Source: Perkinsus chesapeaki ATCC PRA-425 (taxonomy: Eukaryota > Protista > Perkinsozoa). Taken from it: a stretch of 64,000 nt of DNA. The notes beneath the pieces are model-generated. The model ran no database searches. It worked only from the letters and a program-made list of their open reading frames with translations, and was not told the origin of the DNA. The position numbers and the translations under genes are program-made. This document shows positions 2,792-64,000 of the stretch, piece after piece (the stretch's first letter is position 1; every line of letters starts with the position of its first letter). Location: contig JAAPAO010000049.1 of assembly GCA_013115145.1 (NCBI GenBank), positions 39,204 through 103,203 on the forward strand. Reading direction: 5' to 3'.

Positions 2792-2895
2792 CTCTTCAAT
2801 TTCAAGTTATTTAGCTACCATCGCACACGCTTATGTGCTGCCACAAACACTACCGTTTCGGAGTACCGCTGTTGTCGAGTTGTCCAAACAGTGAG

Positions 2896-6412: not shown

Positions 6413-6648
6413 AAGATAACTCAATAATGAGGCTACTCAGGTCCTGAGGCATCCAGGTTCACGCACTGCTACCCTACGCCCCAGAGCTATACCGATATAC
6501 CCACGCGTGCGATAACTCAGAACTTTTTGATCAGAGGAAATCCATAGGTGATATGAGAAGTGTAGTCATTGGCATGCTCATCATCCATGGTGTTGCTGGC
6601 GCGATCATCACAATTTCCAACACCACCATAAGTACCAGGGCACAGGGA

Positions 6649-8472
6649 TTAAACCTGAGCCTGGAACTCCGAACTCTGCTCGATCTTGAACCAAACTAGC
6701 AATGCTTCGTACCATTCTTCATTCGTAAATGGAGGGTTCATGAAACTAGCAACCCACATTAAAGGATATGCTACTCTTTGTATTGTTGACTGTGATACTG
6801 CCCAGGCGACACTCTCACTTAGGGCATAACTAAACACAGGAGAGAACAGACAGACGCAGCAGCCACACTAACCTCGACACAAAGACCCCATCAACAACAA
6901 GCTCCCCTGTATCGGTGAGTGGGGCGAAAACTCCTTGCACGTCCCGAACTATGGCGATATCAACTAAGAGACTGCCACTCATCAATTTTTCAACATGCTC
7001 ACCGTTCTTACCTATCCGTGACAGAGAGGGCCGCGTTAATGCCCTAATCACCACGGAATCCCCAATAGCAAGATCTCCAGCTCGGCGGAAATCATCTTTG
7101 CCGAAATCAACGCGTACAAGGTGGTCAACCGAGGCACGCAGCGCTCGGCCGTCGGCCATGCGAAGGGAGAGCTGAAGTAACGCACTGCTTCAAGTCGTTC
7201 AAGAGGATACCGCAAGATAGAAGAGGTAGTAGCTTAGAGCTGACGACACAACTAACCGGAGACCTTTGTATCAGAAGTACCTACGTAATGCATCTTCCGA
7301 GAAGTATCTTTGTGGATCCAGCCAACCACTGTAGTCGGGACTCCTTCAATTCCCGACACAATCCTGTCCCCAATTGTGATCTCCGACATATACTTCATGG
7401 AGGAGGCTACAAGAAATAGTCAGCATTTAGATAACCAGCATTTCCTTCGATGCAGGCAGCTGATGCTACTCAACCTTGAGGCGACTTATCGAAGGGGCAA
7501 CCTGCCTTGGCCTCGTGATATCTCCACCAGTGCATTGCCAGGGAAGCATGCCGGTCGACACAGCGACGTATACTCTTCGACCTGATAGGAAGGCCGGAGA
7601 AACGAGTGGGCGACGAGCATACCATGAGTTTACCAAGAGTATTAAGAAGATGGGCACCTTGCTTCGAGCGCGCCTTAAACCTCCGTTCCCTGCAAAGCAC
7701 TAAGGCATTGATCTCGTCCCGGCATTCACGAGAACCTGCGAAGCGTACCGCTGTCCCCGATAAACGCGGAATTACAGAACTTCTTGTGATCTTTGGGCAA
7801 GTATGTGCTATGATGAAGCTCGCCACACTTATTGAGCTGAATAAGGCTGCACAAGCAATATGACAGAAATGGGTCGACGTTGCGGTATGCCGATGCCTGC
7901 AGATTGAGGTCTGCCTCACAATAGATGTCAACAGTATCTGAGCGAGAAGAGCGGAACTGAGCTTTCGCCGCATATCACTAGTGTGTACGATACCCAACTG
8001 AAACAGGTCTAACCAGTAAGTAGGAACCATTAGCACGTGTTATACTGGCGTCCCTCTTTACCTAGAGCCTCCCTACGAAGGGAACGAGTGTATCTCACGC
8101 TACTAAGTAGGCTCGGCTAGCTATCGAAGCCTTTACACTAAACACCTACCTTTATACTGCCCGATACTCGCGGTGCCCCATGAGGTACCTGGTATCTGAA
8201 ACAGATCACGTTCGGGATGCTCTAGGGACACACAGTCGGCCACAAAGCGAAAGCTCACTTGGGTCTTGGTTAGGCCATTACCAAGCGAATGCACCGTGCC
8301 TAAGAACCTTTTCAAGTCAGTTACCCACTTTCGACACCTTACTGGTTTCCGATAACAGGGGAATGCAACACCAGACCAGAGCCCATAAGAGCCCTCCAGG
8401 AAGACGAATCCGCTGCAGTCGGTAAATGGCAAGACCTGAAGGATCCCAGTATCCCGGAGACGCGCAGTCCAT
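6649..8472 (-). CDS. Secreted Hog-domain protein (Hedgehog-type Hint plus SRR-like tail) with a Cys-rich N-terminal domain, multi-exon
   Basis: Reverse-strand exons read: signal-like LLWALVWCCIPLLS; Cys-rich IYCEADL...YCLCSLIQLNKCG...KFCN; PA|CFPGNALVEI; MKYMSEITIGDRIV; VVGWIHKD; LRASVDHLV; GVFAPLTDTGELVVDGVFVSSYA; tail ...YPLMW...EWYEALL. Confidence 0.8.
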
Positions 8473-8646
8473 GGTAGAAAATGCAGCTGAACTCGCGGAA
8501 ATGATACTTCACAAGATTCCTAGGAAAACCGCATCCGAGAACAAGAACGAGAAGAAGACACTGTAGTGTAGATCCGGCGTCGGGACTTGTTCCAGAGAGA
8601 ACTCGAGGGGAGCATCCATATCACACGGCTGTTCTTAATGCACTCG

Positions 8647-9963
8647 TTAATGCAATGCAGATCTACGTATATCGACAGAACGCAACAGAGACCAAGGAAT
8701 AGACGAAGCGCAGATGGCTAACGTGATGACTGCATCATATATCCCACAGACAGAACCGACCAATGATATCAACAGCAAAAGGCAAAGAAGGACTATTTGA
8801 AGAATTGCCCGCTTAGATCCTGCTCTGAACTCACTCCAGAGAAAAAGGCTAATAAAAAATATAGGCGGATAGAAATTATGAATCAGAGAATAACAAACGG
8901 AGCCCAAAAGGCCGATAAGACCCTGGAAATTAGGTACAAATATTGCAACAATAACGGTAAAGGCGACTAAAGTGCTTCTTATAGCACAAGATTTGACAAA
9001 CTGGCCTTCCTTGACATTAAAGGCATGTTCAAGTATACGACTCGATGGATTCAGCATGACAGCATAATGAGTAATACATAACAACAGAATACTACATATA
9101 CTAATATAAGAGACTACATCATGACCAGAACCACTTCCAGTAACAGCATCAATAATATTCTGAAATTTAAGAAGAGAGTTTCCCCAACCAATATAACCAG
9201 ACAATGACACAAGGAAGTAGACAATAGCAATAATGCAAAGTCCCCAATAGACAACTCGTCGACGGGCTTGTGGATATTTCATATCATGTAACACGGTCGT
9301 ACTGGCACATGTTACGGCAAAAGCAAGCGTCATACTTGCGAAAGACATACCCAGCCCAATAGCTGTGACAGGGTACGGGTCATGAGATATATCGTCATGA
9401 ATCTCAGGATTCAACGCTCGAGCGAACCCCGCATAAATGAGCACCAACAAAAGACATATAACCGAAGACACTCCTACTGTACCACTTATATAACCGATAT
9501 GCTTCATATTAGGCAACCATGAGAGCGGTAAGAGGATGCAAGTCCATATGAGTATCCAGTAGGGCTGCGGGATTGCTGGATAAAGCTTATATGAGTTTTG
9601 GCCAAGGAGTAGCATAAGCAAACAACATGTACCAATTAAAGCACCATTGACTCCAAATGTAACAGCAAATAATCCCCATCGACCAAAGACATCCATACCG
9701 ATATCTTCATAACTACGCGTTTCTGGTTTCATACAGGCACGTAGAAGTTGAGTATAGAGGATTCCGACAACAGCACTAAATACCATAAGAATAAATCCAA
9801 ATGCATATCCAGCTTGAGCTATTGCCCTTGGTAGACTGAGCATTCCGACACCAATACCAGTGAGGGCAATGTTGGCCACGGCCGACATGTTCGACTGACC
9901 ATGCGATGGAGTGACACCTGACTTTATGCTGTCGATTGTATCAGATGCCTCTACGACTGGCAT
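8647..9963 (-). CDS. AAAP amino-acid transporter, copy 2, intronless
   Basis: ORF 8647-10020 (likely ATG at 9963) carries the same motifs as copy 1 and has a longer C-terminal tail than copy 3. Confidence 0.9.
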   Translation of the reverse strand: MPVVEASDTIDSIKSGVTPSHGQSNMSAVANIALTGIGVGMLSLPRAIAQAGYAFGFILMVFSAVVGILYTQLLRACMKPETRSYEDIGMDVFGRWGLFAVTFGVNGALIGTCCLLMLLLGQNSYKLYPAIPQPYWILIWTCILLPLSWLPNMKHIGYISGTVGVSSVICLLLVLIYAGFARALNPEIHDDISHDPYPVTAIGLGMSFASMTLAFAVTCASTTVLHDMKYPQARRRVVYWGLCIIAIVYFLVSLSGYIGWGNSLLKFQNIIDAVTGSGSGHDVVSYISICSILLLCITHYAVMLNPSSRILEHAFNVKEGQFVKSCAIRSTLVAFTVIVAIFVPNFQGLIGLLGSVCYSLIHNFYPPIFFISLFLWSEFRAGSKRAILQIVLLCLLLLISLVGSVCGIYDAVITLAICASSIPWSLLRSVDIRRSALH

Positions 9964-10183
9964 TGTGAATAAATCAAGATCGTATTCCCCTGAATCGCCA
10001 AACGCGCCATCTAGATGCACACTGTGAAGAACGCAAATACTTCCGGTGATATGTGTTATTAAATGACTGCAACGATAGCATGACGGCTTCTCTTTTCAAT
10101 GATGATATAAAGTATGGGAAGCGATCCAGAATAACTATGGCGGGAAGCCACCACTCAACTACAAGGATCATCTGCTGGCACAC

Positions 10184-11437
10184 TCAAGACACAAGCGTCA
10201 GAACAGAGTCGTAGATACCACAGATAGAGCCCGCAAGGGATATAAAGAGTAGAATAGTTAGTCCTACGAATTGCATAATATGGTATTTCGACCCGCTCCT
10301 CACTTTTTCCCAGATAAACAGACGAATGTAGAAGATCGACGGATAGAAGTTATGGATCAAGGAAAAACAAACAGAGCCTAGGAGACCTATAAGACCCTGG
10401 AAGTTGGGGACAAATATTGCAACAATAACGGTGAAGGCGACTAAAGTGCTTCTTATAGCACAAGATTTGACAAACTGGCCTTCCTTGACATTAAAGGCAT
10501 GTTCAAGTATACGGCTTGATGGATTCAGTAAAACCGCATAATGCGTTACAGACAATAACAGAATACTACATATACTAATATAAGAGACTACATCATGACC
10601 AGAACCACTTCCAGTAACAGCATCAATAATATTCTGAAATTTAAGAAGAGAGTTTCCCCAACCAATATAACCAGACAATGACACAAGAAAGTAGACAATA
10701 GCAATAATGCAAAGTCCCCAATACACAACTCGTCGACGGGCTTGTGGATATTTCATATCATGTAACACGGTCGTACTGGCACATGTTCCAGCAAAAGCAA
10801 GCGTCATACTTGCGAAAGACATACCCAGCCCAATAGCTGTGACAGGGTACGGGTCATAAGATATATCGTCATGGATCTCAGGATTTAGATCTCGAGCGAA
10901 CCCAGCATAAATGAGCACCAACAAAAGACATATAACCGAAGCCACTCCTACTGTACCACTTATATAACCGATATGCTTCATATTAGGCAACCATGAGACC
11001 GGTAAGAGGATGCAAGTCCATATGAGTATCCAGTAGGGCTGCGCGATTCCTGGATAAAGCTTATATGAGTTTTGGCCAAGGAGTAGCATGAGCAAACAAC
11101 ATGTACCAATTAAAGCACCATTGACTCCAAATGTAACAGCAAATAATCCCCATCGACCAAAGACATCCATACCGATATCTTCATAACTACGCGTTTCTGG
11201 TTTCATACAGGCACGTAGAAGTTGAGTATAGAGGATTCCGACAACAGCACTAAATACCATAAGAATAAATCCAAATGCATATCCAGCTTGAGCTATTGCC
11301 CTTGGTAGACTCAATATCCCGACACCGATTGTGGCGAGTACCATGTTAACCACCGCTGAGAAGTTAGACTGGCCATGACAGGGTGTGAGCTCAAGCTTAA
11401 TGCTCTCAAGTGTTTGACTTGACTCTGGGATTGTCAT
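10184..11437 (-). CDS. AAAP amino-acid transporter, copy 3, intronless
   Basis: ORF 10184-11548 (likely ATG at 11437). Near-identical to copy 2 over ~900 bp at offset 1474. Confidence 0.9.
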   Translation of the reverse strand: MTIPESSQTLESIKLELTPCHGQSNFSAVVNMVLATIGVGILSLPRAIAQAGYAFGFILMVFSAVVGILYTQLLRACMKPETRSYEDIGMDVFGRWGLFAVTFGVNGALIGTCCLLMLLLGQNSYKLYPGIAQPYWILIWTCILLPVSWLPNMKHIGYISGTVGVASVICLLLVLIYAGFARDLNPEIHDDISYDPYPVTAIGLGMSFASMTLAFAGTCASTTVLHDMKYPQARRRVVYWGLCIIAIVYFLVSLSGYIGWGNSLLKFQNIIDAVTGSGSGHDVVSYISICSILLLSVTHYAVLLNPSSRILEHAFNVKEGQFVKSCAIRSTLVAFTVIVAIFVPNFQGLIGLLGSVCFSLIHNFYPSIFYIRLFIWEKVRSGSKYHIMQFVGLTILLFISLAGSICGIYDSVLTLVS

Positions 11438-12564
11438 TGATTTCGAACTGAAATTAACCTGAAATATGCTATACTTAAAACAAAGCACGCTTATAGAGAT
11501 AAGACAAGCATCTCCTTTCCCTAGGTTCAATCCGATCTCATCACTCAAAAAGCAAAGATGGCAATAACGGGGCTAGAAAAGCAACGATAGTCTACACTTA
11601 GGTAATACCGCCCGATTCACCTAGAGCAATTCGAGAAGCGCAGCTTGGAGGCTCCGAATCAACTACCATATAGCCTGTGTAGGAGGGTGGAAAATCCCCA
11701 AGAAGAGCTCACTCTTCGCCAAGCAAGGGCTGCGAAGATCGCCCTAGTGTACGCGTGCTGTACCCCACATCCACGCGCACAACAATCTGTACAGTAATGG
11801 TTTGACTAAAAACATAGATAATTAATGATGTACGAGTGATCACTACCGACTACAACGAGATGTGTGCCTTAAAGTATTGCCCAGGATTACTCCTAGTAAC
11901 TGCTCATTCTATCGTAATGTTTGGGGTTTGGATGCGTCACGGACTAACGCATGCGTGCAAATACCGTTGTGACAGCAAAAGCGGTCTACTTCTTGGGTAC
12001 TAGTACTGATCTTATATCAGCGCGAAAATGCGTGTTCTTGGCTAATACAATCAGACGAGGAAGTAATATTCTTAGTCACAGAAGTGTTCCAAATACAATA
12101 TACCACCGAAACGGTAATCACGGCAATAGCTCAACTAAAGGGTATTCTCGAGGCCAATACTCTAGGCTGAGCCCTGGGATTTCTCCAACCCAACCACCTG
12201 TGGAAGACTAACTCAAGAGGACTTTAGTAAGGAACACAGTAGATGAAACAGTTAAGCAGTAACAACAGTAGTAGGATATTCTACAACTGATGAATCAGCA
12301 AATAGCCCCCCATGACCCTAGGCCAAAAGAGGGCATTGTTGTGCTGGCTTTCCATAGGAAAAGTGTTTACCATCATACAGCGACGGCAGCGCTCTTTGTA
12401 GCATCGGTACAGGTACATGACGGACGAGCAGAACTCCGAACGTCAAAGACCGGTGCTACTGGGGATAGACAAAACGAGACCGAACCAGAAACGAATCAGG
12501 ATCGACAATTTTGTGAATTGATTGAAAAGATGCTGTAAAATGTTAATGGTGGTTGTGGATTTAG

Positions 12565-13797
12565 TTACGCGCACAGCTCCTTTATAGCCGCATACACACC
12601 GAATCCAGAACCTATTACAGAGATGAACATCAGAAAACAAAGGAAAAGCGTAAATGCAATCCATTTAGGAGATCCAAAAATCTTCTCGCCTTTCAAATGA
12701 GAAAGGCGTAGATAGAAAACTGATGGATAAATATTGTGGATTAGCGAGAAACAAATAGACCCAAGTAGATTGATAAGAGCTGAGAAGCTTGGAACAAATA
12801 TCGCTACCAGAACGGTAACGGCGACTAGGCAACTTCTAAGCAAGACCGATCTCACAATCTGATTACTCTTGATACCAACCCATTCCTCAAATATTCTGCA
12901 CGCCGGATTCATCATAACAACATAATGTGTGGCACAGACTATAAGTATACCGACAATGCAAGTTGTAGCAACTGCAGAGTTATTACCAGGGACTGGTGCC
13001 ATAGCAGTAATGATAGTATCAAAATGCAATAGCTCTTGTCCCCAACCAATATACCCTGCTAATGATGCTAATAAGAATAGCATGATTAGACAGATAAAAG
13101 ATACCAAAAGGACCTTCGATTGTGCTTCAGGATGTTGCATATCCTTTAGAATAGTAGTGGTAGTACTCGTTACCGCATAAGAAAACGTCAACGTAGAAAA
13201 CGTTGTACCGAGCCCAACTATCGAAATTGGAGCTGCCCGGTACGGTACGGCTTCTGTAGTCTCGACTCGCTCCTGGACACCCGCAATTATAATCATGATC
13301 AAGACCACGACAACCGCCGCCACGCCCACAGTACCACTGAAATAACCAACTTGTTTCATAGTCCGCAGACAAGCTAATGGTAGCATTATAGCCGTCCATA
13401 TCAGTATCCAATACGTTTGGCTTATCTCTGGGGCTAGGAGAACAGAGTTCTGTCCCAATAGTAACATGAGTAGGCATCCAGTGCCCACAAGGGCAACATT
13501 TAATGCGATAGTAACCGCCATCATTCCCGGATATCCGAACGCATCCCGTCCAATATCCTCATAATTACGAGTACAGGGGTTCATACATTTCCGAAGCAAA
13601 TGGGCGTCCAGTAGACCCTCCGCCCCACATGCTACCAGAAGGATAAACCCTAGAACGTACCCGGCTTGAGCTATCGCTCCTGGGAGACCAAGCAGACCAA
13701 CACCGATACCGGTGAGAATTATATTCACTATGGCCGAAAAATTCGACTGACCGGTTTCTTCTACCGAAATCTTACTGGTTTCCGATGATATTGACAT
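12565..13797 (-). CDS. AAAP amino-acid transporter, copy 4, intronless
   Basis: ORF 12565-13890 (likely ATG at 13797). Motifs GVGLLGLPGA, YEDIGRDAFG, DMQHP, GSICFS. Confidence 0.9.
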   Translation of the reverse strand: MSISSETSKISVEETGQSNFSAIVNIILTGIGVGLLGLPGAIAQAGYVLGFILLVACGAEGLLDAHLLRKCMNPCTRNYEDIGRDAFGYPGMMAVTIALNVALVGTGCLLMLLLGQNSVLLAPEISQTYWILIWTAIMLPLACLRTMKQVGYFSGTVGVAAVVVVLIMIIIAGVQERVETTEAVPYRAAPISIVGLGTTFSTLTFSYAVTSTTTTILKDMQHPEAQSKVLLVSFICLIMLFLLASLAGYIGWGQELLHFDTIITAMAPVPGNNSAVATTCIVGILIVCATHYVVMMNPACRIFEEWVGIKSNQIVRSVLLRSCLVAVTVLVAIFVPSFSALINLLGSICFSLIHNIYPSVFYLRLSHLKGEKIFGSPKWIAFTLFLCFLMFISVIGSGFGVYAAIKELCA

Positions 13798-14241
13798 AAT
13801 AAAGGAAGTAACGTAACTGAATCTAGAAGAGGTGCAAATGTGTAAACGCCCAGCAAAAGTAATGCGGCAAATGCAATGGAACGCCATCACACAAACGACA
13901 ACGAATAAGCCCGCAGCCTAGTGTTCAAATGTGTACAAGGCTTTTAGCTAAGGAAAATCCATTGTATTCTCAGGACACAAATATATGAGCTGGCAAGGCA
14001 GCTCTCCGAAACCTGATGGTCTTCGAAGGATCTAGACAAACACCTGGTAATATTTAACGCGAACACGGGTTCCCACCAGCCCCAATGCTACTGGCACTGC
14101 AAACGGAACCGCATTGGAAGAGGAGCGTCACCGTGCAACTCACACGTCAATCTCGCGCGCCTCGAATATAGGATTTAACAGCGCTACTTCCATCTCGCTC
14201 GCCTGAAACTATCATATGTATTGTCACGGAAATCTTAAGGA

Positions 14242-14491
14242 TGATGGGATTCGCCATAACTGGTAACTCAATGCCGCTAGGCGCAAGTAAAACTAGCTAC
14301 AAATGATCTTATACTCAACTATCTTCAGATCTATATCATCTAGATACCCATTATCGAAGGCCACGGTTACAATATTGGGCGAGCGAGATCTAATAATAGT
14401 CCCAGGAAACCAATGCCGACGGTTGACACCGTTTAGCATAATATAAGCGACCGATATCCGCTGGCCAATCATGAGACTGGGAGTCTCATCG
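14242..14491 (-). repeat. 3' LTR (inner boundary 14488 or 14491); overlaps the last ~66 codons of the integrase ORF
   Basis: Matches 20947-21195 except at 3 transitions (gctag/gttag, ctagc/ctaac, ctggg/ctagg). Confidence 0.92.
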
Positions 14492-16209
14492 CGCCCCCCT
14501 TGTGGGCCTCCACAAGCATCAGACGGGATCTTCCATTGCACCGCATCCAAGCGTATCATAACAGGGGTATTGTCATTACCATCCAAGAACCATACCCATA
14601 GTTTATTGGAATAATCGCAAGGATCGTATGTCACTCTAGCGGATCGCCAAGCGGAAGTGGAGTCCATTTTAACATCAATATACATACCTTCTCGAGAAAC
14701 AACAGCAGAACCATCGCACGGATAAGGGTACAACATAACAATATTGTAAAGGTTCTCGGTAGTGACCAAGCCATTTGCCAACCTTACTTTGACACGCCGT
14801 CCCGAGATGCACTCGATGATATGGCCCATCCGAAAACTCATACCGAGCTTACGGCCTCCCATATAGACCAAAACACAATCTCCAGGACGAAAGGTGCCTC
14901 GGACTTTACCGTCGCAAGCAGTAGATCGGCATTTCTGAGCAACAGCGGTGAGGGAACGGTCTTTGAGATCACGCCACAGCCACTGCATAAAACAGTTCCT
15001 AACCGCGCGAACGCGATTGGGACACAACGACTCGTGACCATTAGCAGATTCTTGGACCGCCTCGACACAGCCCCGCGACCGAGTACGGCCACAGTGCAAA
15101 CTATCTGGAGTGATGATATCGGCGCCTTCCTCAGAAACATAGAAGCTGCCCAGAGGGCGAGTGTTCAGCAGTAACATTACCTCCTCCAGTAGCTCATCCT
15201 GCGCGTCCGCATTCTCCGGCCAACGCCCCGCAGTATGGCGCAACATCACTCGCAAACGGTCACTAGCAATGCCGTGAAGCTTCTCGGATCCGAGCTCCCA
15301 AGGCGCCCGGCTGGAAATCAGCTCGACCCGAGCATTGATCTCAGAGCTGACTTTAGAGACAAAATTCTCCTCAGTCCGGAAATAACTAGCACGATCACAC
15401 ACCACGATAGCAACGGAACCAGTGCGTAACTTGAGCAATCGAAGAACACGGAGAGCTTCACGAGCGGTCTCGCTAGAGACTCTAAAAAGGCTTATGTGCT
15501 TACTATACAAACAGCAAGCCGACATAACTTTCCATTTATCCCCCACCGAGTAGAAGTCTATAGCAACCTTATAGTAAGTAGGCATCCTCGCCAGGAATGT
15601 TTCATCGGAGTGACCAACAGAAGGAAGCTGTGTCCAATCCCGTCTCGCACGCAGGATCTTACAAACGTGGCACTGAGCCACTAGGTCCTTCATTTGCCGG
15701 CCACAACCATCCATATGAAACATAGTACACCGCGACAAAGAATCTCGCACCCCAGCATGTCGACAAGCTCGATGGCCATCAAGAAGAATCTTTCGCCTCA
15801 CAGAATCTGCTGCCCTAGGTATAACATAACGGAGGACTTGAGTACCATAGGGACTACCCGAGCGAAAGACAACTAAACCATCAGCATCGCACAATAAGGG
15901 GCCACACGCGGGACCTTTGCCAGCTCGAATCTCCTGACATCGCACATCATCAGCTTGAGCATTTGCCACTACAACTTTACGATCGTCATCACTAAACATA
16001 TGGGGGTATTCCAGACCATTGGCCTCTCCGCCCCCCTTGACATTCCACTTTAATAGGTGAATGACAAAACGTAAGGCTTTAAACGAATGACAAATAGCAT
16101 CAAAGCTGAACGACTGCTTAGCCACACGATTAGACAGACTTGTCGTCTCATCAGACCGATCAGTCTCAGCAAACCGAATGTAGTCCTCGACCAGTTGGTC
16201 AACCAAGGG
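14293..16209 (-). CDS. Integrase (HHCC, DDE core, SH3-like C-terminal domain) followed by two Tudor-like domains
   Basis: GHRACRHAG...QCHVC; VAIDFY; VVCDRASYF; APWELGSEKL; LLNTRPL; FRPGDCVLV. Then two repeats of the pattern G.xI.V...W..xxV/I....xxV.FxxG...I.L...W/YKI. Confidence 0.88.
   Translation of the reverse strand, partial: PLVDQLVEDYIRFAETDRSDETTSLSNRVAKQSFSFDAICHSFKALRFVIHLLKWNVKGGGEANGLEYPHMFSDDDRKVVVANAQADDVRCQEIRAGKGPACGPLLCDADGLVVFRSGSPYGTQVLRYVIPRAADSVRRKILLDGHRACRHAGVRDSLSRCTMFHMDGCGRQMKDLVAQCHVCKILRARRDWTQLPSVGHSDETFLARMPTYYKVAIDFYSVGDKWKVMSACCLYSKHISLFRVSSETAREALRVLRLLKLRTGSVAIVVCDRASYFRTEENFVSKVSSEINARVELISSRAPWELGSEKLHGIASDRLRVMLRHTAGRWPENADAQDELLEEVMLLLNTRPLGSFYVSEEGADIITPDSLHCGRTRSRGCVEAVQESANGHESLCPNRVRAVRNCFMQWLWRDLKDRSLTAVAQKCRSTACDGKVRGTFRPGDCVLVYMGGRKLGMSFRMGHIIECISGRRVKVRLANGLVTTENLYNIVMLYPYPCDGSAVVSREGMYIDVKMDSTSAWRSARVTYDPCDYSNKLWVWFLDGNDNTPVMIRLDAVQWKIPSDACGGPQGGRDETPSLMIGQRISVAYIMLNGVNRRHWFPGTIIRSRSPNIVTVAFDNGYLDDIDLKIVEYKIICS
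14489..14502 (-). other. Polypurine tract next to the 3' LTR, lying inside the integrase ORF
   Basis: The minus strand reads AAGGGGGGCGCGA directly before the LTR repeat and encodes QGGRD. Confidence 0.7.
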
Positions 16210-18974
16210 CTACATTCGGTTTCATGACCAACTTGGTCATGAACCTCATCGTTCACAGAAACTAGATATGAGACTTTATCAACAAGTGGCTGCTCATAAT
16301 GGGGTTGCCACTCAGAGTCTAGAGGATCTTCTGTGTGGTCGAAGATTGCCCAGGCATTGCTGCCTCGCATAGGATCACGAGCAACCTCTTCGTCAAGACC
16401 ACCTTCGTCACACAAACACTGATGTAACGATAATCCAGACGCAACCAATCGCGCCTCAAAGACTCTTGAAAGTAAGTCTGCCTCGTCGTTGCGGGAACCC
16501 TCGATGTGATGAACAGAGACATCTGAGAGCTCACGCATTCGTGATAACTCAGCCAGTAATCCACTCACTAACCTGGATAATACTCGGCGCTCGACCCCCC
16601 GAGACTCTTTGAGGAGATCAGCGCTATCGCAGGAAGTGGCCCACCGGACACATGACAGATTATCACAATAGATCTCAACCTTGATGCGACCCTCAACACT
16701 TGTGGTAGATGAGACTCCAGTAACACTTTGCCTGTACTCGAGGAAGTCGACAATCATCTGAGTCATCCTTAAAAGGACAACCAACTCGCGACGATTCGAG
16801 TGCCAGTTTACCTCGCTCTTCTTAAATCGGTAGACTTCACTGAAGAGACGAGTGGCGTCAGCAAAGGCTACAATACCACCACCAGATGAAGACGCATCGC
16901 AGTAGCAACGGAGAACGATCGGGCTGGCTTCGATTGGCCTAACCTCGGAAGTGTGCCGGCAGGTTTCCCTAACCAGCTCTTCCATCCAATCTAGCATACA
17001 CCGGAAAGCCGCATAAGCATTGTCGGTCAGACGAGAAAGATCAATCTGGGTGTCCCAAGGCTCTCTGTGAAAACATCGAGCAATAAGCGACCGGATAGCA
17101 TCGCCACAACCCCTAGCATATGGGTGTTGCTTCCCAGGGTCGTAGCTTAGACACCCACCGGCCTTGAAAACATCAATCTTGCTGACCTGAGCTGTCGTGC
17201 GACAACGCTCAATGAACGAAACCACCACAGCCAATCGTTTCTCTCGTTGACATGTCAATACTATTAAACTGCTCTCGTAACGGACTCGCATGCCGAGGAA
17301 GGAACCCTCGCTAGCAACAGCGATCTCGACACCGCATTCAGAGAGCAACGAAAGTAGTTGATGCTGTTTGTCTTCTGTAACCATTATGAACACTTTCCGC
17401 ATCTGTACATCAAACCCCGCCCGAAGGAGGAGACATAACAGCAACTTGAACATAAAGACGACCACGCGGATGGTTCCGGAGATGGCCATATCATCCACAA
17501 ACAACATCAACATCAACGTCCAGAGCTGTTGCAAAAGCAAAGCACACAGCTGCTGGATTCGGTGAAAATCTATAGACCGGGCAGAGCATACCAACCGACC
17601 AAGAGAGCCAGAGAGCCCACAGGGCCCAAAGACCACTCCGAAACATAAACGGCATGAGGCAAACAATTCACCGGTCCCTGACCGAAGGTGTAAAACGTTG
17701 TTCACACATCGGCATTTGTAAAAGGCTGCCCGAGCATCCAGAAGGAAGGTACACTCTCTGGACTCTGCTCGCAGTAATGCGATAGGGTGAAATAACAATG
17801 GCACATCACTGCTAGCGGGCGGTAACGCCTTATTTACACAACGGAAATCCACGACCAAACGGCTTTTGCGAGAGGTAGTTGGTGGTATGAGAAAAACCTG
17901 AGCGGCTGCTGCCGACTCGCCGACCCCCTTCACGGAGCACTCAGTACTCGAGGTCGGGATCCACCAACGAGAAAGGACATACTCTTGAACTAGCCGGCGA
18001 TACTCGCTTTTTAAAGGATCACTCAAGCGAGAATATAACGACGCCGCATAGGAACGACCTTTCTCCTGTACCGTCTTGGGTGTTGGAACCCAGATCTCAC
18101 AAACATGAGTCTGCTCCACGACATCCGTCGTTTCACAAGGAGCGAGCTCACGAACCCTGCTCTTGTAAGCACCGTTGGTCTTAGGGATAACCTTCCACCC
18201 TTCATGGACAACTTGGCTCAGGATTTCATCGACAATACCTGACTCGTGCGGTTGAAGATCGGCACGAAGAACTCGGTCAGGCTTGCTCGGAACGGTCGAT
18301 GATGAATCCACACAACCATGAGTGGTAGAAATAAAACCTTCATCCTTGTAGTCACCGATGTTATTTAGGACATCTATATCTAGCTCTACGACTTGTGCTA
18401 CTGAGCCTAGACCACCGAATTCTTCGGGAGAGTCACTCTGACGGTAAACACACTCCCCACCGACATGCATATAGGTCGCTCCTCGAGACTCTAACCCCCA
18501 CTCTTCGATAAGCTGTCGGCCAGCAAGGACCAATAACTCATCGTTAGGAACAACACCAGGAGATGGGAGTATACGGAGCTCACAGTCGACGAATTCGGAT
18601 ACCAAGGTTCTAGACTCAAAGCCGTAGACAGCTATTTTACAATCAATCTGATGCTGGATGGCCACTCTCTGACCGTTCGCCATGGCAACGAGGGTGCTAC
18701 CCCCGGTACCATTAACCGAACAGCCAATAGCATCAAGAGCCACTATGGCTTTATCTACACTTGATACTAATAAATAAGGCCGGCCAGCACCGGAATCTAC
18801 TACGCATCGTGCCTCCAAGAATGGAGAATCAGATGCAAAACGTGCAGGACTAATTCGCACCCTCAAAGACATCTCGGGTGGTACAGGAGTTAAAAGGGAA
18901 ATAACATCAAAAATAGAAGAAGTCGGATGTCCGAGAGCTAATGTATCACTAGGCACATCGCCCTCATCATTCAT
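16050..18974 (-). CDS. Pol: aspartic protease, reverse transcriptase and RNase H (in the -1 frame relative to gag)
   Basis: VVDSGAGRPY; RLVVDFRCVN, LDARAAFY, LCFGVVFGP, FVDD; RCYCDASS, HSNRREL, YCDNLSCVRW, HHIEGSRNDEADLLSR. Confidence 0.92.
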   Translation of the reverse strand: MNDEGDVPSDTLALGHPTSSIFDVISLLTPVPPEMSLRVRISPARFASDSPFLEARCVVDSGAGRPYLLVSSVDKAIVALDAIGCSVNGTGGSTLVAMANGQRVAIQHQIDCKIAVYGFESRTLVSEFVDCELRILPSPGVVPNDELLVLAGRQLIEEWGLESRGATYMHVGGECVYRQSDSPEEFGGLGSVAQVVELDIDVLNNIGDYKDEGFISTTHGCVDSSSTVPSKPDRVLRADLQPHESGIVDEILSQVVHEGWKVIPKTNGAYKSRVRELAPCETTDVVEQTHVCEIWVPTPKTVQEKGRSYAASLYSRLSDPLKSEYRRLVQEYVLSRWWIPTSSTECSVKGVGESAAAAQVFLIPPTTSRKSRLVVDFRCVNKALPPASSDVPLLFHPIALLRAESRECTFLLDARAAFYKCRCVNNVLHLRSGTGELFASCRLCFGVVFGPCGLSGSLGRLVCSARSIDFHRIQQLCALLLQQLWTLMLMLFVDDMAISGTIRVVVFMFKLLLCLLLRAGFDVQMRKVFIMVTEDKQHQLLSLLSECGVEIAVASEGSFLGMRVRYESSLIVLTCQREKRLAVVVSFIERCRTTAQVSKIDVFKAGGCLSYDPGKQHPYARGCGDAIRSLIARCFHREPWDTQIDLSRLTDNAYAAFRCMLDWMEELVRETCRHTSEVRPIEASPIVLRCYCDASSSGGGIVAFADATRLFSEVYRFKKSEVNWHSNRRELVVLLRMTQMIVDFLEYRQSVTGVSSTTSVEGRIKVEIYCDNLSCVRWATSCDSADLLKESRGVERRVLSRLVSGLLAELSRMRELSDVSVHHIEGSRNDEADLLSRVFEARLVASGLSLHQCLCDEGGLDEEVARDPMRGSNAWAIFDHTEDPLDSEWQPHYEQPLVDKVSYLVSVNDEVHDQVGHETECSPWLTNWSRTTFGLLRLIGLMRRQVCLIVWLSSRSALMLFVIRLKPYVLSFTY

Positions 18975-18979
18975 CCCTT

Positions 18980-20962
18980 CTAGTTTCCCGAACCAGACTT
19001 CTCGCCGCTCTTAACCATTGGGTCGCTCTTGTGGTTACCACTTTCGTCATCTTTCTTGACAAGGTCTTCTATTTCCCATACTCGGAATTTTCCAGATGGG
19101 AGAGAGGATACACTAGATAACCCGCCCTCTCGGTTGTGATAACCAACGATATAATAAGTACGACCGTAACGGTTATGACGAGAAAGAACGCCATCTGGTT
19201 TACACATAGATATCATCTCCTGCTTATTCCTGCAACCATAACCAGTCACGCCAAACGCCGCTGCGTACCGACCACAAAACTCTCTGAAGGCTGACCTCGA
19301 TTTTCCACCTTGGTCGCTAGATTGGTTTTGCTTATCGGTGCCGGGGACACCATGAATGGCCCCGACAGAGTCATTGATTGGCGGTGACCTTTGAGGAATA
19401 ATGCTGTTTGTCTCTTCCATAAGTCTGGCCTCGCTGCGGATGTACTCCACGATAGTGTCCTGAACAAATGGACCAGTGCAATGAAGAGGGACAGCACTTT
19501 CCCAATCGCTGTCTGATGATGCTTTTTGTTTACAGCGACGGATCACACCCTGGACCATATCTCTCGGCAACTTGGATAGAATTTGCCTCACGAACTGGAT
19601 CAACTGGGCATCGGTGGATCCTGCGCTATAAACCACGCGATAAATCTCGCAAGCCGCAACCACTTCCTTCAAATATGAATCGATGTCCCTGGCGGACTTG
19701 AACTTGAGTCCAGAGACAATGGAAGTGAGTTTCTCCACGAGAACACTCCTGCGAGCATGAACAGCCATACATGCCTGCTTTATAGCAGTCCAATCATTCC
19801 CATTGGTATTGTAAGTCCTCTTGGCAGTATCAAGAACATCAGGACACTTCTCTAAAGTGTTGAGGAATTTTTGGACACAGGCATGCTTTAGACCAAAATG
19901 GGGTTGAAAGTTACCGTTCTCGTCATAAAAACCACCACCAGCCTCATATAAAACTTCTTCAATCCTCAGCGCATGCTGGGCAAACTCATGGCTCTTGCCC
20001 AACGATTGAGTAGCAATTTTTCCAACATCTGCAGATTCGCACTTCTTGGGAAGATTCTGAACATTCACTCTTGGAGCTTCGACATTGGACGCTGAGTCGC
20101 CCGGGTACACATCACGCTGATGATCAGGGGAAGCTGATAACATAAGAGCCCTTGAAGCTTGGCTAGACTGGTGATAACTCATTGCCGATGCCCCAACTGC
20201 TATTACCGGAGATCCGCTAGGATCTATTGGTAAAGCTACTGGTTGCAAGGAACCCGGTAGAGGGACACCTTGCTGAATAGGAGCTTGATGAGGAACAGCT
20301 GGTCTATGAAACACTTGTTGGGGAACACTTTGTTGAAGAGCAGCTTGTTGATAAACAGCTTGTTGATGAAAGACTTGTTGTGCCGGAAGACTGTAACGAT
20401 CCTGTTGTGACACTGCTGAACGTGCTTGAAGTTCTCCACTTCGTCTCGATAAGGTAGAATGAACACTATCAATACGACCTTGATTGAGCACTTGTTGAGT
20501 AGCACTGCTCGGGGCAGGTGGTGTAACGTATTGACGAATTATACCAGAGTTCGAAGAGGAAACTCTAGAGGCATTTGACCGTCCCAATGCTTGGGAATTT
20601 AACTCGGTCAACTGATCATGCCTCAACTCCAAGGCTATCACGTATGCGCCAGCTTCTTCTAGAACAGCTCGGAGATCAGCTTCTTGCTCTGCGAGAGTAT
20701 CACAAACCCTCTCATCATCTTCACTCACAATAATAATGTTATTAAGTCTCTCAACAACATCACGCAACTTCGATCGAATCTTGCCTCTGTGAATCCTTGC
20801 CTTCTTAAGTTCTTCTCGCAAAGATTCTGGGGAGTCGAATAAGGCGGCTGACTCGATGAACGACGGCCTTCGAATAAGAACAGACGGGCGTTCTTGTACG
20901 CCAGCCGCAGACCCTTCTATCGGGTTCGGATGTGTAGGTGTCGCCATGATGGGATTCGCCAT
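18980..20962 (-). CDS. Gag (coiled-coil N-terminus, Q-rich repeats, capsid-like core, RRM-like C-terminus, no CCHC knuckle)
   Basis: 660-aa ORF directly after the 5' LTR. Capsid-like segment ...FVRQILSKLP. No CX2CX4HX4C motif seen. Confidence 0.8.
   Translation of the reverse strand: MANPIMATPTHPNPIEGSAAGVQERPSVLIRRPSFIESAALFDSPESLREELKKARIHRGKIRSKLRDVVERLNNIIIVSEDDERVCDTLAEQEADLRAVLEEAGAYVIALELRHDQLTELNSQALGRSNASRVSSSNSGIIRQYVTPPAPSSATQQVLNQGRIDSVHSTLSRRSGELQARSAVSQQDRYSLPAQQVFHQQAVYQQAALQQSVPQQVFHRPAVPHQAPIQQGVPLPGSLQPVALPIDPSGSPVIAVGASAMSYHQSSQASRALMLSASPDHQRDVYPGDSASNVEAPRVNVQNLPKKCESADVGKIATQSLGKSHEFAQHALRIEEVLYEAGGGFYDENGNFQPHFGLKHACVQKFLNTLEKCPDVLDTAKRTYNTNGNDWTAIKQACMAVHARRSVLVEKLTSIVSGLKFKSARDIDSYLKEVVAACEIYRVVYSAGSTDAQLIQFVRQILSKLPRDMVQGVIRRCKQKASSDSDWESAVPLHCTGPFVQDTIVEYIRSEARLMEETNSIIPQRSPPINDSVGAIHGVPGTDKQNQSSDQGGKSRSAFREFCGRYAAAFGVTGYGCRNKQEMISMCKPDGVLSRHNRYGRTYYIVGYHNREGGLSSVSSLPSGKFRVWEIEDLVKKDDESGNHKSDPMVKSGEKSGSGN
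18983..18989 (-). other. -1 programmed ribosomal frameshift slippery heptamer G_GGA_AAC at the gag/pol junction
   Basis: The minus strand reads TCG GGA AAC TAG. An X XXY YYZ heptamer sits in the gag frame immediately before the gag stop, and the -1 frame is open into pol (GKLEGMNDEG). Confidence 0.85.
20270..20385 (-). repeat. Imperfect 15-nt tandem repeat encoding QQxxx pentapeptides in Gag
   Basis: Plus-strand units such as acagcttgttgataa / acagcttgttgatga / gcagcttgttgataa encode QQVFH-QQAVY-QQAAL-QQSVP-QQVFH. Confidence 0.75.
20936..20946 (-). other. Primer-binding site TGGCGACACCT
   Basis: Begins with TGG directly after the 5' LTR end. Complementary to a tRNA 3' end ...GGTGTCG-CCA (G discriminator, typical of tRNA-Ser). 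Confidence 0.75.
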
Positions 20963-21196
20963 AACTGGTAACTCAATGCCGTTAGGCGCAAGTAAAACTA
21001 ACTACAAATGATCTTATACTCAACTATCTTCAGATCTATATCATCTAGATACCCATTATCGAAGGCCACGGTTACAATATTGGGCGAGCGAGATCTAATA
21101 ATAGTCCCAGGAAACCAATGCCGACGGTTGACACCGTTTAGCATAATATAAGCGACCGATATCCGCTGGCCAATCATGAGACTAGGAGTCTCATCA
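20947..21196 (-). repeat. 5' LTR (outer boundary 21193 or 21196)
   Basis: The minus strand runs TGATGAGAC...CCCATCA, with terminal inverted repeat TGATG/CATCA. Contains the first gag ATG (20962). Confidence 0.92.
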
Positions 21197-21530
21197 GGAC
21201 AAGCGACTCCGAGATTCCAAGAGGCCGAGTATCCTTTGTCGTTTCCTTATTAGTGAAACGGTCAGCACGGATTTCTGAATTAAGACAACTTAAATGATTA
21301 GTAGTAAATTACACGTGATGATATAGCGCATGTTTATACCGACATTGCTAGCTCTCAGCTTGCTTCTCCCCGACGGCGGTTGCGTAGACACAAATCCATC
21401 AACTTGAAGGCATCAAGCTCTAATATGTGACAACAAATACCAACAAACTAGGACGGTTTCTTTATTTACCGCTGAGAGTCGCCACGAATAAGAAATCGCC
21501 ACAGCCAGCGATCTGACCGTCAAAACCAGA

Positions 21531-21603
21531 GCGGCTTTGGCGCAGTAGGTAGCGCGTAGGTCTCATAATCCTAAGGTCGCGAGTTCGATCCTCGCAGGCC
21601 GCA
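21531..21603 (+). tRNA. tRNA-Met (CAT), elongator type
   Basis: Full cloverleaf: acceptor GCGGCTT/AGGCCGC, D arm GCGC/GCGC, anticodon arm TAGGT-CTCATAA-TCCTA, T arm GCGAG-TTCGATC-CTCGC, followed by TTTT. Lacks the initiator A1:U72 pair and GGG/CCC anticodon stem. Confidence 0.95.
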
Positions 21604-63770: not shown

Positions 63771-64000
63771 ATGTCTACTGATTCTACTCCCGCTTCCAGA
63801 CATAATATTTCTCCTTATGCTCAAGCTTTGACTTGTGATCATTACTATCATCTCGGTCTTGATACCGATATGGATCTTAAGGCCCTCTTCGGTGATGTTA
63901 AGTACTTCGTTATGATGGGTTCTCCTACTCGTGCGGAAACCTTCGCCGAGGTGATGGCTAATGCCTTTGTGGAGCAGGGCCTTCCTAAGCCTACTGTAAT
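63771..64000 (+). CDS. UPP: Uridine phosphorylase paralog, 5' part, runs off the window end
   Basis: MSTDSTP...DHYYHLGLDTDMDLKALFGDVKYFVMMGSPTRAETFAEVMANA. Confidence 0.9.
   Translation, partial: MSTDSTPASRHNISPYAQALTCDHYYHLGLDTDMDLKALFGDVKYFVMMGSPTRAETFAEVMANAFVEQGLPKPTV

What the first reader, a model, noticed from the sequence alone, without database searches (positions are those of the whole stretch)
14293..14695. Retrotransposon integrase carrying tandem Tudor-like domains, a possible Tudor analogue of chromovirus targeting
Seen: after the SH3-like integrase C-terminal domain, two ~55-aa modules align with each other (REGMYIDVK...WRSARVT...LWVWFLDG...IRLDAVQWKI and IGQRISVAY...WFPGTII...VTVAFDNG...IDLKIVEYKI). 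Known: G.RI.V...W/F..G.I....V.V.FDDG...I.L...W/Y is the Tudor/agenet beta-barrel pattern, whose aromatic cage reads methyl-Lys/Arg, and chromoviruses use an integrase chromodomain to target chromatin. Inference: this lineage may steer integration with Tudor readers. I do not know of this architecture being described for Bel/Pao-like elements.
Basis: partly seen in the sequence, partly recalled or inferred. Interest (0 to 1): 0.88.

Follow-up and report, generated by a model that had tools for sequence, protein, structure and literature searches.

The report
Retrotransposon integrase with Tudor-like tail
A young LTR retrotransposon of the oyster parasite Perkinsus chesapeaki ends its integrase with two small Tudor-like barrels, the second encoded inside the LTR itself; they probably tie integration to marked chromatin, an arrangement that is rare but has one published precedent.

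Summary
The quoted peptides are real, but they lie on the minus strand. They form the C-terminal 135 residues of pol in a 6,955-bp LTR retrotransposon (window 14242-21196) of Perkinsus chesapeaki. The element has 250-nt LTRs, a 3-bp target duplication, a primer-binding site inside gag and a polypurine tract inside pol.

The two modules do not resemble each other in sequence beyond chance. AlphaFold2 nevertheless predicts two five-stranded barrels. The closest solved structures to the pair are almost all tandem Tudor, Agenet or SAWADEE histone readers.

Module 2 also shows weak but consistent Tudor/Agenet sequence signal, and its aromatic and acidic residues sit at the usual cage positions. Module 1 is Tudor- or KOW-like by predicted fold only and has no conserved cage.

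Both modules are kept in at least four diverged Perkinsus lineages under purifying selection. A sister integrase lineage lacks them.

Module 2 is encoded entirely within U3 of the LTR in three families. The polypurine tract encodes the conserved inter-module linker.

"Bel/Pao-like" is not supported: the RT and IN are too divergent for Pfam or PDB searches to classify. A Tudor-bearing Gypsy element was reported in Ectocarpus in 2025, so this is a new variant rather than a new kind. Chromatin targeting remains an inference.

The parts
14239..14241 (-). Target-site duplication (TCC), copy next to the 3' LTR
   Evidence: The same 3 nt flank the 5' LTR at 21197-21199. A 3-bp duplication is also seen in L001 (CTG) and in L004 (CAG), where an empty paralogous site confirms it.
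14242..14491 (-). 3' LTR, 250 nt, ends TGA...TCA (the first base reads C in this copy). 199 of the 250 nt are the last 65 codons and the stop of pol.
   Evidence: (D2). It differs from the 5' LTR at 4 of 250 positions, counting the first base.
14296..14472 (-). Module 2: a Tudor/Agenet-like barrel (tail residues 87-145), encoded wholly inside the LTR. The stop codon is at 14293-14295.
   Evidence: Pfam hits are below threshold: Agenet E 0.004, Tudor_3 0.02, BAHCC1 Tudor 0.04. Profile against PDB: KDM4C and KDM4B Tudor, E 0.002-0.003. Tudor-repeat proteins dominate the exhaustive search. AF2 and Foldseek. Cage-position residues.
14473..14526 (-). Inter-module linker. It contains the polypurine tract AAGGGGGGCG (14492-14500), which encodes the invariant QGGR of the linker.
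   Evidence: The LTR starts directly after the tract in the window, L001 and L004.
14527..14703 (-). Module 1: a small five-stranded barrel (tail residues 10-68), Tudor/KOW-like by predicted fold only.
   Evidence: AF2 pLDDT 85.6. Foldseek TM 0.55-0.6, E >= 0.056, to the Spt5/NusG KOW domain, PHF19, RDM15, PHF20L1 and 53BP1 Tudor domains, chromo-barrels and PWWP. No sequence hit to Tudor.
14731..14892 (-). SH3-like C-terminal domain of the integrase. Assigned by sequence pattern and conservation only.
   Evidence: Conserved in all relatives, including those without the tail. Family profile against the module 2 profile: E 0.0014 over 26 columns. No Pfam assignment.
15283..15774 (-). Integrase zinc-binding (HHCC) motif and D,D,E catalytic core.
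   Evidence: Motifs read, coordinates. Pfam rve E 0.012 and Integrase_H2C2 E 0.05 here; 2e-5 and 1.6e-5 in relative P0002.
14293..18974 (-). pol (PR-RT-RNase H-IN-tail), given as one part. It is interrupted by one frameshift and has no premature stop inside the resulting long ORFs. Motif positions: DSG at 18783-18797, FVDD at 17487-17501, the RNase H DAS motif at 16887-16904.
   Evidence: The RT is not recognised by Pfam, PDB or the protein databases.
18983..18989 (-). Heptamer GGGAAAC directly before the gag stop codon (18980-18982). It is a candidate programmed -1 shift signal.
   Evidence: The same heptamer plus stop occurs in L001. The same ORF spacing occurs in L004.
18980..20962 (-). gag-like ORF, intact. 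The conserved start ATG is at 20945-20947, spanning the LTR end and the PBS. This copy has an extra upstream ATG at 20960-20962.
   Evidence: P0001 and the L004 copy start at the homologous ATG. No Pfam family is matched.
20933..20946 (-). Primer-binding site TGGCGACACC..., located inside the gag coding sequence.
   Evidence: It is identical in L001 and L004. It does not match the neighbouring tRNA-Met.
20947..21196 (-). 5' LTR, 250 nt. It carries a second copy of the module 2 coding sequence upstream of gag.
21197..21199 (-). Target-site duplication (TCC), copy next to the 5' LTR.

Best explanation
Window 14242-21196 (minus strand) is a young copy of a highly divergent LTR retrotransposon of Perkinsus chesapeaki.

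Shown:
- Its pol product ends with three consecutive small beta barrels: the integrase's own SH3-like C-terminal domain and then two added modules.
- Module 2 is a Tudor/Agenet-type barrel. It has aromatic and acidic residues at the positions that form the methyl-lysine cage in such domains.
- Module 1 is a Tudor/KOW-like barrel without a conserved cage.
- Module 2 is encoded inside U3 of the LTR, and the polypurine tract lies in the linker coding sequence.
- Both modules are kept by purifying selection in several diverged Perkinsus families.

Inferred:
- The tail stays attached to the integrase and binds a methylated histone tail, mainly through module 2, with module 1 acting as a supporting or second-contact barrel as in many tandem Tudor readers.
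- This would tether the integration complex to a particular chromatin state. It would be the same logic as the chromodomain of chromoviruses, arrived at with a different reader fold.
For: Element:
- LTR pair with 4 differences in 250 nt.
- 3-bp target duplication, proven by an occupied and an empty paralogous site in P. marinus.
- The PBS and PPT are conserved in three families.

Fold:
- AF2 tail model, pLDDT 73, with two five-stranded barrels.
- The Foldseek PDB top 50 are nearly all tandem Tudor/Agenet/SAWADEE readers: BAHCC1, ADCP1, SETDB1, AGDP3, SHH1, FMRP, UHRF1, SGF29 and Spindlin1. E is 2e-4 to 2e-3, and 126-166 columns of the 145-residue query are aligned.

Sequence, module 2:
- Three Tudor-clan Pfam families are the best, sub-threshold hits.
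- The family profile hits KDM4C and KDM4B Tudor domains at E 0.002-0.003, then KDM4A, AGDP3, 53BP1 and BAHCC1.
- In an exhaustive phmmer search of 1.84 billion proteins, 11 of 14 hits outside the family are multi-Tudor/Agenet proteins.
- Across 155 of their repeats aligned to module 2, the residues under W107, F108 and F125 are aromatic in 97%, 90% and 100%. The residue under D126 is acidic in 98%. Those under G110 and G128 are Gly in 92% and 100%.

Conservation:
- The tail is present in the window family, in P. marinus P0006/P0022, in P. chesapeaki P0001 with P. olseni P0003, and in P. olseni P0013.
- Window against the P. marinus copy: pS 0.65-0.84 (saturated) against pN 0.15 for module 1 and 0.22 for module 2.
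- The tail is absent from the sister integrases P0004 and P0005, so it is an accretion.
Against: - No binding or insertion-preference data exist.
- Single-repeat scores against Tudor proteins are only 4-11 bits. The low E-values come from summing repeats, and the same summing produced a clearly false hit: module 1 against the HTH-repeat protein P0020.
- All Pfam hits are below the gathering scores.
- Foldseek TM-scores for the pair are low (about 0.3), because the relative orientation of the two domains is not matched.
- Module 1 alone matches KOW domains as well as it matches Tudor domains.
- The cage could not be checked in three dimensions, because model coordinates are not exposed.
- One cage position is Tyr in the window and P. 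marinus but His in P0001.
- The four insertion contexts seen show no common feature: a gene-proximal site near a tRNA gene, a 31-nt satellite, a site upstream of a kinesin gene, and a copy lying beside or within another LTR element.
Confidence: 0.5

Rival explanations
1. The two modules are extra integrase C-terminal-domain-like barrels, possibly made by duplication of the element's own SH3-like domain. On this reading they bind DNA or RNA or shape the integration complex, and they read no histone mark.
For: - The family profile of the SH3-like domain against the module 2 profile gives hhalign E 0.0014 over 26 columns at 35% identity. This is better than module 1 against module 2.
- KOW domains of Spt5/NusG and ribosomal protein L19, which are nucleic-acid-binding barrels, appear among the hits.
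- Module 1 has no conserved cage.
Against: - The hhalign probability is only 18%.
- The structural neighbours of the pair are overwhelmingly histone readers.
- Module 2 keeps the W-[FY]-x-G and [FY]-D-x-G signature of Tudor repeats.
Confidence: 0.25
2. The tail is a protein-protein adaptor that reads methyl-arginine or an unmodified partner, either a host factor or the element's own Gag, rather than histones.
For: Tudor domains as a class also bind methyl-arginine (established knowledge). The fold evidence does not discriminate between ligands.
Against: The best structural neighbours are methyl-lysine readers, not extended Tudor/SN-like domains. No SN-like flanking helices are predicted.
Confidence: 0.1
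3. The tail directs insertion next to RNA polymerase III genes, by analogy with other tRNA-targeting elements.
For: A tRNA-Met gene lies 335 nt from the 5' LTR in the window.
Against: No tRNA gene lies within the fetched flanks of the L001, L003 or L004 copies.
Confidence: 0.05
4. Reading of pol into the LTR is an accident without function, and module 2 is not a real domain.
For: It lies in U3, which is normally non-coding. Pfam scores are below threshold.
Against: - The arrangement is kept in three diverged families.
- Synonymous sites are saturated (pS 0.84) while pN is 0.22.
- A compact barrel is predicted with block pLDDT 73-90.
Confidence: 0.03

Closest known systems
Chromoviruses (Ty3/gypsy elements with an integrase C-terminal chromodomain, e.g. 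MAGGY)
   Same: A histone-reader-type domain is fused to the C-terminus of an LTR-retrotransposon integrase, after the SH3-like domain. The presumed role is tethering integration to marked chromatin (role as summarised in the preprint read).
   Different: The fold here is a five-stranded Tudor-type barrel, twice over, with no C-terminal helix. A chromodomain has three strands and a helix. The RT and IN are not recognisably Ty3/gypsy.
Gypsy-10_Ec32 of Ectocarpus (and a Tribonema homologue), Genome Biol 2025, PMC12477816
   Same: An LTR retrotransposon with a C-terminal Tudor domain. Its authors describe it as the first TE reported to carry one.
   Different: It comes from a stramenopile rather than an alveolate, and the passage I read speaks of one Tudor domain, not two barrels. 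The exhaustive tail search found no integrase-linked relative outside Perkinsus, so the acquisition is probably independent.
Tandem Tudor / tandem Agenet / SAWADEE histone readers (BAHCC1 TTD, ADCP1/AGDP1, SETDB1, UHRF1 TTD, SHH1)
   Same: They are the best structural neighbours of the two-module tail. Module 2 shares their sequence signature.
   Different: No Pfam model is passed. The relative orientation of the two domains is not matched (TM about 0.3). Module 1 lacks a conserved cage. Ligand binding is untested.
Host-factor tethers of retroviral integrases (LEDGF/p75 PWWP domain)
   Same: A Royal-family barrel that reads histone methylation links an integrase to chromatin (own knowledge; LEDGF appears in a Foldseek hit, rank 25).
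   Different: Here it would be part of the integrase polypeptide.
Retroviral open reading frames that overlap U3 of the 3' LTR (e.g. nef, sag)
   Same: Coding sequence lies inside U3, and the PPT lies inside coding sequence (own knowledge).
   Different: Those are separate accessory genes. Here the pol/integrase reading frame itself runs into the LTR and ends there.

Membership tests
LTR retrotransposon | Two direct long terminal repeats with TG..CA-type ends, flanked by a target-site duplication | tested here: met
   250-nt LTRs with 4 differences, ends TGA...TCA, 3-bp duplication TCC. An empty paralogous site for a relative is present in L004.
LTR retrotransposon | PBS next to the 5' LTR and a polypurine tract next to the 3' LTR | tested here: met
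   TGGCGACACC and AAGGGGGGCG are conserved in the window, L001 and L004. The primer tRNA was not identified.
LTR retrotransposon | gag and pol with PR, RT, RNase H and a DDE integrase | tested here: inconclusive
   The motifs DSG, FVDD, DAS, HHCC and D,D,E were read directly. Only rve and Integrase_H2C2 are seen weakly by Pfam, best at 2e-5 and 1.6e-5 in P0002. RT, PR and RNase H match no Pfam or PDB model.
Tudor / Agenet (Royal family) domain | Five-stranded antiparallel beta barrel of about 55-60 residues | tested here: met
   DSSP on the AF2 models shows five strands in each module. This is a prediction, not a solved structure.
Tudor / Agenet (Royal family) domain | Sequence match to a Tudor-clan Pfam model at its gathering score | tested here: not met
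   Module 2: Agenet 17.9 bits (cut-off 27), Tudor_3 15.3 (25.8), BAHCC1 Tudor 14.4 (28). Module 1: nothing.
Tudor / Agenet (Royal family) domain | Nearest solved structures are Tudor-family readers | tested here: met
   Met for the pair. For module 1 alone the result is mixed, with Tudor, KOW, chromo-barrel and PWWP hits at E >= 0.056.
Tudor / Agenet (Royal family) domain | Aromatic cage: aromatic residues at the end of strand 1, the start of strand 2, and the end of strand 3 or the following turn, often with an acidic residue | tested here: inconclusive
   Module 2: Y96, W107/F108, F125 and D126 are conserved as aromatic or acidic in three families. Y129 is His in P0001. The same columns are aromatic or acidic in 86-100% of the Tudor repeats aligned at each column (up to 155 repeats; only 21 reach the Y96 column). 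Geometry could not be checked. Module 1: only W45, F48 and W66 are invariant, and W28 is replaced by Glu in two families, so a conserved cage is not met there.
Tudor / Agenet (Royal family) domain | Binds methyl-lysine or methyl-arginine | not testable with these tools
   No binding data are available.
Bel/Pao LTR retrotransposons | Bel/Pao-type protease, gag and integrase C-terminal families (Pfam Peptidase_A17, DUF1758, DUF1759, DUF5641) | tested here: not met
   None is listed at E up to 5 for pol and IN, up to 1 for pol pieces and relatives, and up to 0.01 for gag.
Bel/Pao LTR retrotransposons | RT groups with Bel/Pao in a phylogeny | not testable with these tools
   The RT finds no relative outside the family in Pfam, PDB or the protein database. 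No comparator set was available.
Bel/Pao LTR retrotransposons | Metazoan hosts (own knowledge) | tested here: not met
   The host is Perkinsus chesapeaki, an alveolate.
Chromoviruses | Chromodomain (three strands plus a C-terminal helix) at the integrase C-terminus | tested here: not met
   Five-stranded barrels without the helix. No Pfam Chromo hit.
Tudor-bearing Gypsy lineage of stramenopiles (Gypsy-10_Ec32) | Homology of the element and its Tudor domain to that lineage | not tested
No non-Perkinsus integrase-linked hit was found.

The most novel reading that the evidence does not exclude
A retroelement lineage found so far only in Perkinsus, too divergent for current RT and IN models, has independently built a tandem Tudor-type histone reader onto its integrase. 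That would be a second fold, evolved convergently, for the chromovirus strategy. It comes together with an unusual 3-bp target duplication.
Probability: 0.35. Interest if true: 0.75.

Novelty: new variant of a known kind. Interest (0 to 1): 0.6.

Why it matters
Integration-site choice decides how a mobile element and its host coexist. Built-in chromatin readers are known mainly as chromodomains, with one Tudor case reported in 2025 in brown algae.

A second, apparently independent Tudor-type solution in an alveolate parasite would show that fusing a reader to the integrase is a recurrent evolutionary route. It would also give a natural marker for chromatin states in Perkinsus, whose chromatin is little studied.

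They also show that standard domain models miss it entirely, which matters for TE annotation in protist genomes.

Tried and rejected
- Plus-strand reading of the given coordinates: only stops.
- Direct sequence searches of the terminal pol ORF, the tail and the upstream pol ORF against PDB: nothing relevant. Family profiles of IN and pol against PDB gave nothing, or one marginal hit to a pararetrovirus-type 'enzymatic polyprotein' at E 0.017.
- Word-indexed protein search with the upstream pol ORF: no hit. With the tail alone: only P0006.
- BLASTP, a shuffle test and hhalign of module 1 against module 2: no similarity beyond chance.
- Module 1 profile against PDB: chance hits only.
- Local comparison with a Pfam-recognisable Ty3/gypsy pol in L003: nothing beyond a weak integrase match, so the superfamily stays unassigned.
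- BFVD fold search: only unspecific small barrels of phages and giant viruses, and no integrase domain.
- Metagenome scan with the tail alignment: no relative.
- tRNA primer: the neighbouring tRNA-Met does not match the PBS.
- tRNA-targeting idea: not supported by three other loci.
- The summed-repeat E-values were not accepted at face value. Module 1 scored 1.7e-12 against P0020, a protein that Pfam reads as arrays of HTH domains.
Full report
WHAT IS THERE

The coordinates given (14293-14695) read as stops on the plus strand. Upstream in the same ORF are an H-x4-H...C-x2-C zinc motif, the D, D and E of an integrase core, and an SH3-like stretch. Pfam sees the integrase only weakly here: rve E 0.012 and Integrase_H2C2 E 0.05. 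It sees it better in the relative P0002, at 2e-5 and 1.6e-5.

THE ELEMENT

Two 250-nt direct repeats lie at 14242-14491 and 20947-21196. They differ at 4 positions, counting the first base.
- They end TGA...TCA and are flanked by a 3-bp duplication, TCC.
- Directly inside the 5' LTR lies TGGCGACACC..., a primer-binding site that starts with the complement of CCA.
- Directly before the 3' LTR lies AAGGGGGGCG, a polypurine tract.
- Between the LTRs, on the minus strand, are a 660-codon gag-like ORF and pol. Pol carries DSG (protease), FVDD (RT) and DAS (RNase H) motifs, then the integrase.
- The element is 6,955 bp, and it is the only copy in the window.

State of this copy: gag is open. Pol carries one frameshift and no premature stop within the resulting long ORFs.

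HOST AND RELATIVES

Integrase relatives are all from Perkinsus: P. chesapeaki P0001, P. olseni P0002, P0003, P0004 and P0013, and P. marinus P0005, P0006 and P0022. A neighbouring host gene places the window on contig JAAPAO010000049.1 of the P. chesapeaki assembly GCA_013115145.1.

L001 is a second, diverged family in the same genome, with 44% integrase identity. It has 424-nt LTRs, the same PBS and PPT, and a 3-bp duplication CTG. Its pol is split into three long ORFs, that is, two interruptions.

In P. marinus, L004 holds an internally deleted copy with 243-nt LTRs. About 10 kb away it also holds a paralogous empty site. The single CAG at the empty site is duplicated on either side of the insertion. 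This fixes the LTR ends and proves the 3-bp duplication.

DO THE TWO MODULES RESEMBLE EACH OTHER?

Not in sequence.
- BLASTP finds nothing at E<=100.
- A shuffle test gives z = -0.07.
- Profile-profile comparison of family alignments gives E 0.07-0.09 over 11-13 columns.

Its aligned blocks do coincide with equivalent predicted strands.

ARE THEY TUDOR-LIKE?

Structure. AlphaFold2 was run on the 145-residue tail with the six-sequence family alignment. It gives mean pLDDT 73 and two five-stranded barrels joined by a low-confidence linker. Module 1 alone gives pLDDT 85.6.

Foldseek of the pair against the PDB returns almost only tandem Tudor, Agenet or SAWADEE histone readers. These include BAHCC1 TTD with H4K20me1, ADCP1 and AGDP Agenet pairs with H3K9me2, SETDB1, SHH1, FMRP/FXR2, UHRF1 TTD, SGF29 and Spindlin1. 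E is 2e-4 to 2e-3, and 126-166 alignment columns cover both modules. TM is only about 0.3, because the relative orientation of the two domains differs. Two hits are to KOW pairs.

Module 1 alone hits Spt5/NusG KOW, PHF19, RDM15, PHF20L1, 53BP1 and UHRF1 Tudor, chromo-barrels and PWWP. TM is 0.55-0.6 and E >= 0.056. That makes it a Royal-family or KOW-type barrel, and no finer call is possible.

Sequence, module 2.
- The best Pfam hits are Agenet, Tudor_3 and BAHCC1-like Tudor, all below threshold.
- A three-family profile hits KDM4C and KDM4B Tudor at E 0.002-0.003. It then hits L19, KDM4A, AGDP3, 53BP1 and BAHCC1.
- An exhaustive phmmer search of 1.84 billion representatives with the tail returned 17 proteins. 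Three are family members. Of the other 14, Pfam shows 11 to be arrays of Tudor_5, Agenet, Tudor_3 or 53BP1-type Tudor domains. One was too long to scan. Two are not Tudor proteins.

Caveat: the low E-values are sums over many repeats of 4-11 bits each. The same effect produced a plainly false hit, module 1 against an HTH-repeat protein. I therefore count the enrichment for Tudor arrays, not the E-values.

Sequence, module 1. It has no Tudor signal.

THE CAGE

Module 2 has aromatic or acidic residues at the end of strand 1 (Y96), at the start of strand 2 (W107, F108), at the end of strand 3 (F125, D126) and in the following turn (Y129).
- In P. marinus these are identical. In P0001 they read Y, YY, W, D and H.
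- In 155 Tudor repeats of the outside hits aligned to module 2, the matching columns are aromatic in 97%, 90% and 100%, and acidic in 98%. The flanking glycines are kept in 92% and 100%.

In module 1 only W45, F48 and W66 are invariant, and W28 is Glu in two families. So a cage is plausible in module 2 and not conserved in module 1. Many tandem Tudor readers use only one cage, so this is compatible with that class (own knowledge). The geometry could not be inspected, because the model coordinates are not exposed.

CONSERVATION

The tail occurs in at least four diverged lineages. It is absent from the more distant integrases P0004 and P0005, which end just after the SH3-like domain.

Between the window and the P. 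marinus copy, synonymous sites are saturated (pS 0.65-0.84). Non-synonymous differences are 0.15 in module 1 and 0.22 in module 2. The constraint is therefore on the protein, including the part that lies in the LTR.

The 3' LTR begins at 14491, inside the linker. The last 65 codons of pol, which include all of module 2, and the stop codon occupy 199 of its 250 nt. The 5' LTR therefore carries the same coding sequence upstream of gag.

The polypurine tract encodes the invariant QGGR of the linker. The same layout holds in L001 (232 of 424 nt) and in L004 (184 of 243 nt).

The conserved gag ATG spans the last LTR base and the first two PBS bases, so the PBS is coding as well. Gag ends with GGGAAAC plus a stop codon in both the window and L001. 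This is a canonical -1 slippery pattern (own knowledge).

CLASSIFICATION

The order PR-RT-RNase H-IN excludes a copia-type layout. Beyond that nothing could be assigned.
- No RT, protease, RNase H or Bel/Pao-specific Pfam family is matched.
- The pieces have no PDB relative.
- The upstream pol ORF has no protein-database hit.
- There is nothing beyond a weak integrase match to a recognisable Ty3/gypsy pol of P. marinus.

'Bel/Pao-like' is therefore unsupported. The lineage is best called unclassified.

MECHANISM AND RIVALS

Best-supported reading (confidence 0.5 for the functional part, about 0.9 for the anatomy): the tail is a tandem Tudor-type reader attached to the integrase. It would tether integration to methylated chromatin through the module 2 cage.

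Rivals:
- Extra integrase-CTD-like barrels, with a nucleic-acid-binding or architectural role, possibly made by duplication of the SH3-like domain. Family profiles give E 0.0014 over 26 columns but a probability of 18%. Confidence 0.25.
- A methyl-arginine or protein adaptor. Confidence 0.1.
- Targeting of Pol III genes. A tRNA-Met gene lies 335 nt away here, but there is none near three other copies. Confidence 0.05.
- Functionless read-through, contradicted by the selection data. Confidence 0.03.

KNOWN AND NEW

Reader domains on TE proteins are known. Chromo and PHD domains dominate the surveyed fusions (bioRxiv 10.1101/2021.11.30.470311). A Gypsy element of Ectocarpus with a C-terminal Tudor domain was published in 2025 and described as the first TE carrying one (PMC12477816).

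I found no paper on Perkinsus LTR elements of this kind. No relative of the tail turned up outside Perkinsus.

The new features here are the host lineage, the two-barrel layout, the LTR-encoded half, and the extreme divergence of the element. Verdict: a new variant of a known kind. Interest 0.6.

LIMITS AND SLIPS

- The primer tRNA, the transcript ends and the three-dimensional cage remain undetermined.

Noticed in passing
window 21531-21603 (+): A tRNA-Met (CAT) gene lies 335 nt outside the 5' LTR. Its 3' end does not match the element's PBS. No tRNA gene lies near the three related copies that were fetched.
   Followed up: yes
window 14239-14241 and 21197-21199; L001 80-82 and 6855-6857; L004 5855-5857, 10662-10664 and the empty site at 16037-16039: The target-site duplication is 3 bp in three independent insertions, and an empty paralogous site in P. 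marinus proves it. To my knowledge LTR elements usually make 4-6 bp duplications.
   Followed up: yes
window 18980-18989; L001 2029-2040; L004 about 7967-7975: Gag ends with the heptamer GGGAAAC followed at once by the stop codon. A pol ATG lies 5 nt later, or overlaps the stop in L001. This is a conserved candidate -1 frameshift, or a termination-reinitiation arrangement.
   Followed up: partly
window 20933-20962: The PBS lies inside the gag coding sequence. The conserved gag ATG spans the LTR/PBS junction. This copy has an extra in-frame ATG 15 nt upstream, within the LTR.
   Followed up: partly
window 14293-18974 (-): The RT, protease and RNase H of this lineage match no Pfam, PDB or protein-database entry, although their motifs are readable. 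Standard TE annotation would miss the element.
   Followed up: partly
window 5183-13890 (-): Four tandem amino-acid transporter (Aa_trans) genes lie here. Two of them are 88% identical over 300 nt. The element sits about 350 nt upstream of the start of the last one.
   Followed up: partly
L001 18-116 and 6824-6922: The P. chesapeaki L001 copy is inserted in a 31-nt tandem repeat (satellite-like), which flanks it on both sides.
   Followed up: partly
L003 1044-13832: A Pfam-recognisable Ty3/gypsy-type gene lies between a 237-nt LTR pair in P. marinus. A truncated copy of the Tudor-tailed family sits inside the same span, which looks like a nested insertion.
   Followed up: no
P0020 (one search hit): Module 1 scored E 1.7e-12 against a protein that Pfam reads as arrays of HTH domains, purely by summing weak repeat matches. 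It is a warning about whole-protein E-values on repeat proteins.
   Followed up: yes
P0007, P0021 (one search hits): The giant proteins that combine many Tudor repeats with EF-hands are the tail's best outside matches. Their organisms and role are unknown, and whether Perkinsus has such proteins was not examined.
   Followed up: no
window 60706-63970 and 908-3305: Further direct repeat families (D3, D4, D5) lie among ORFs at both ends of the window. They were not examined.
   Followed up: no
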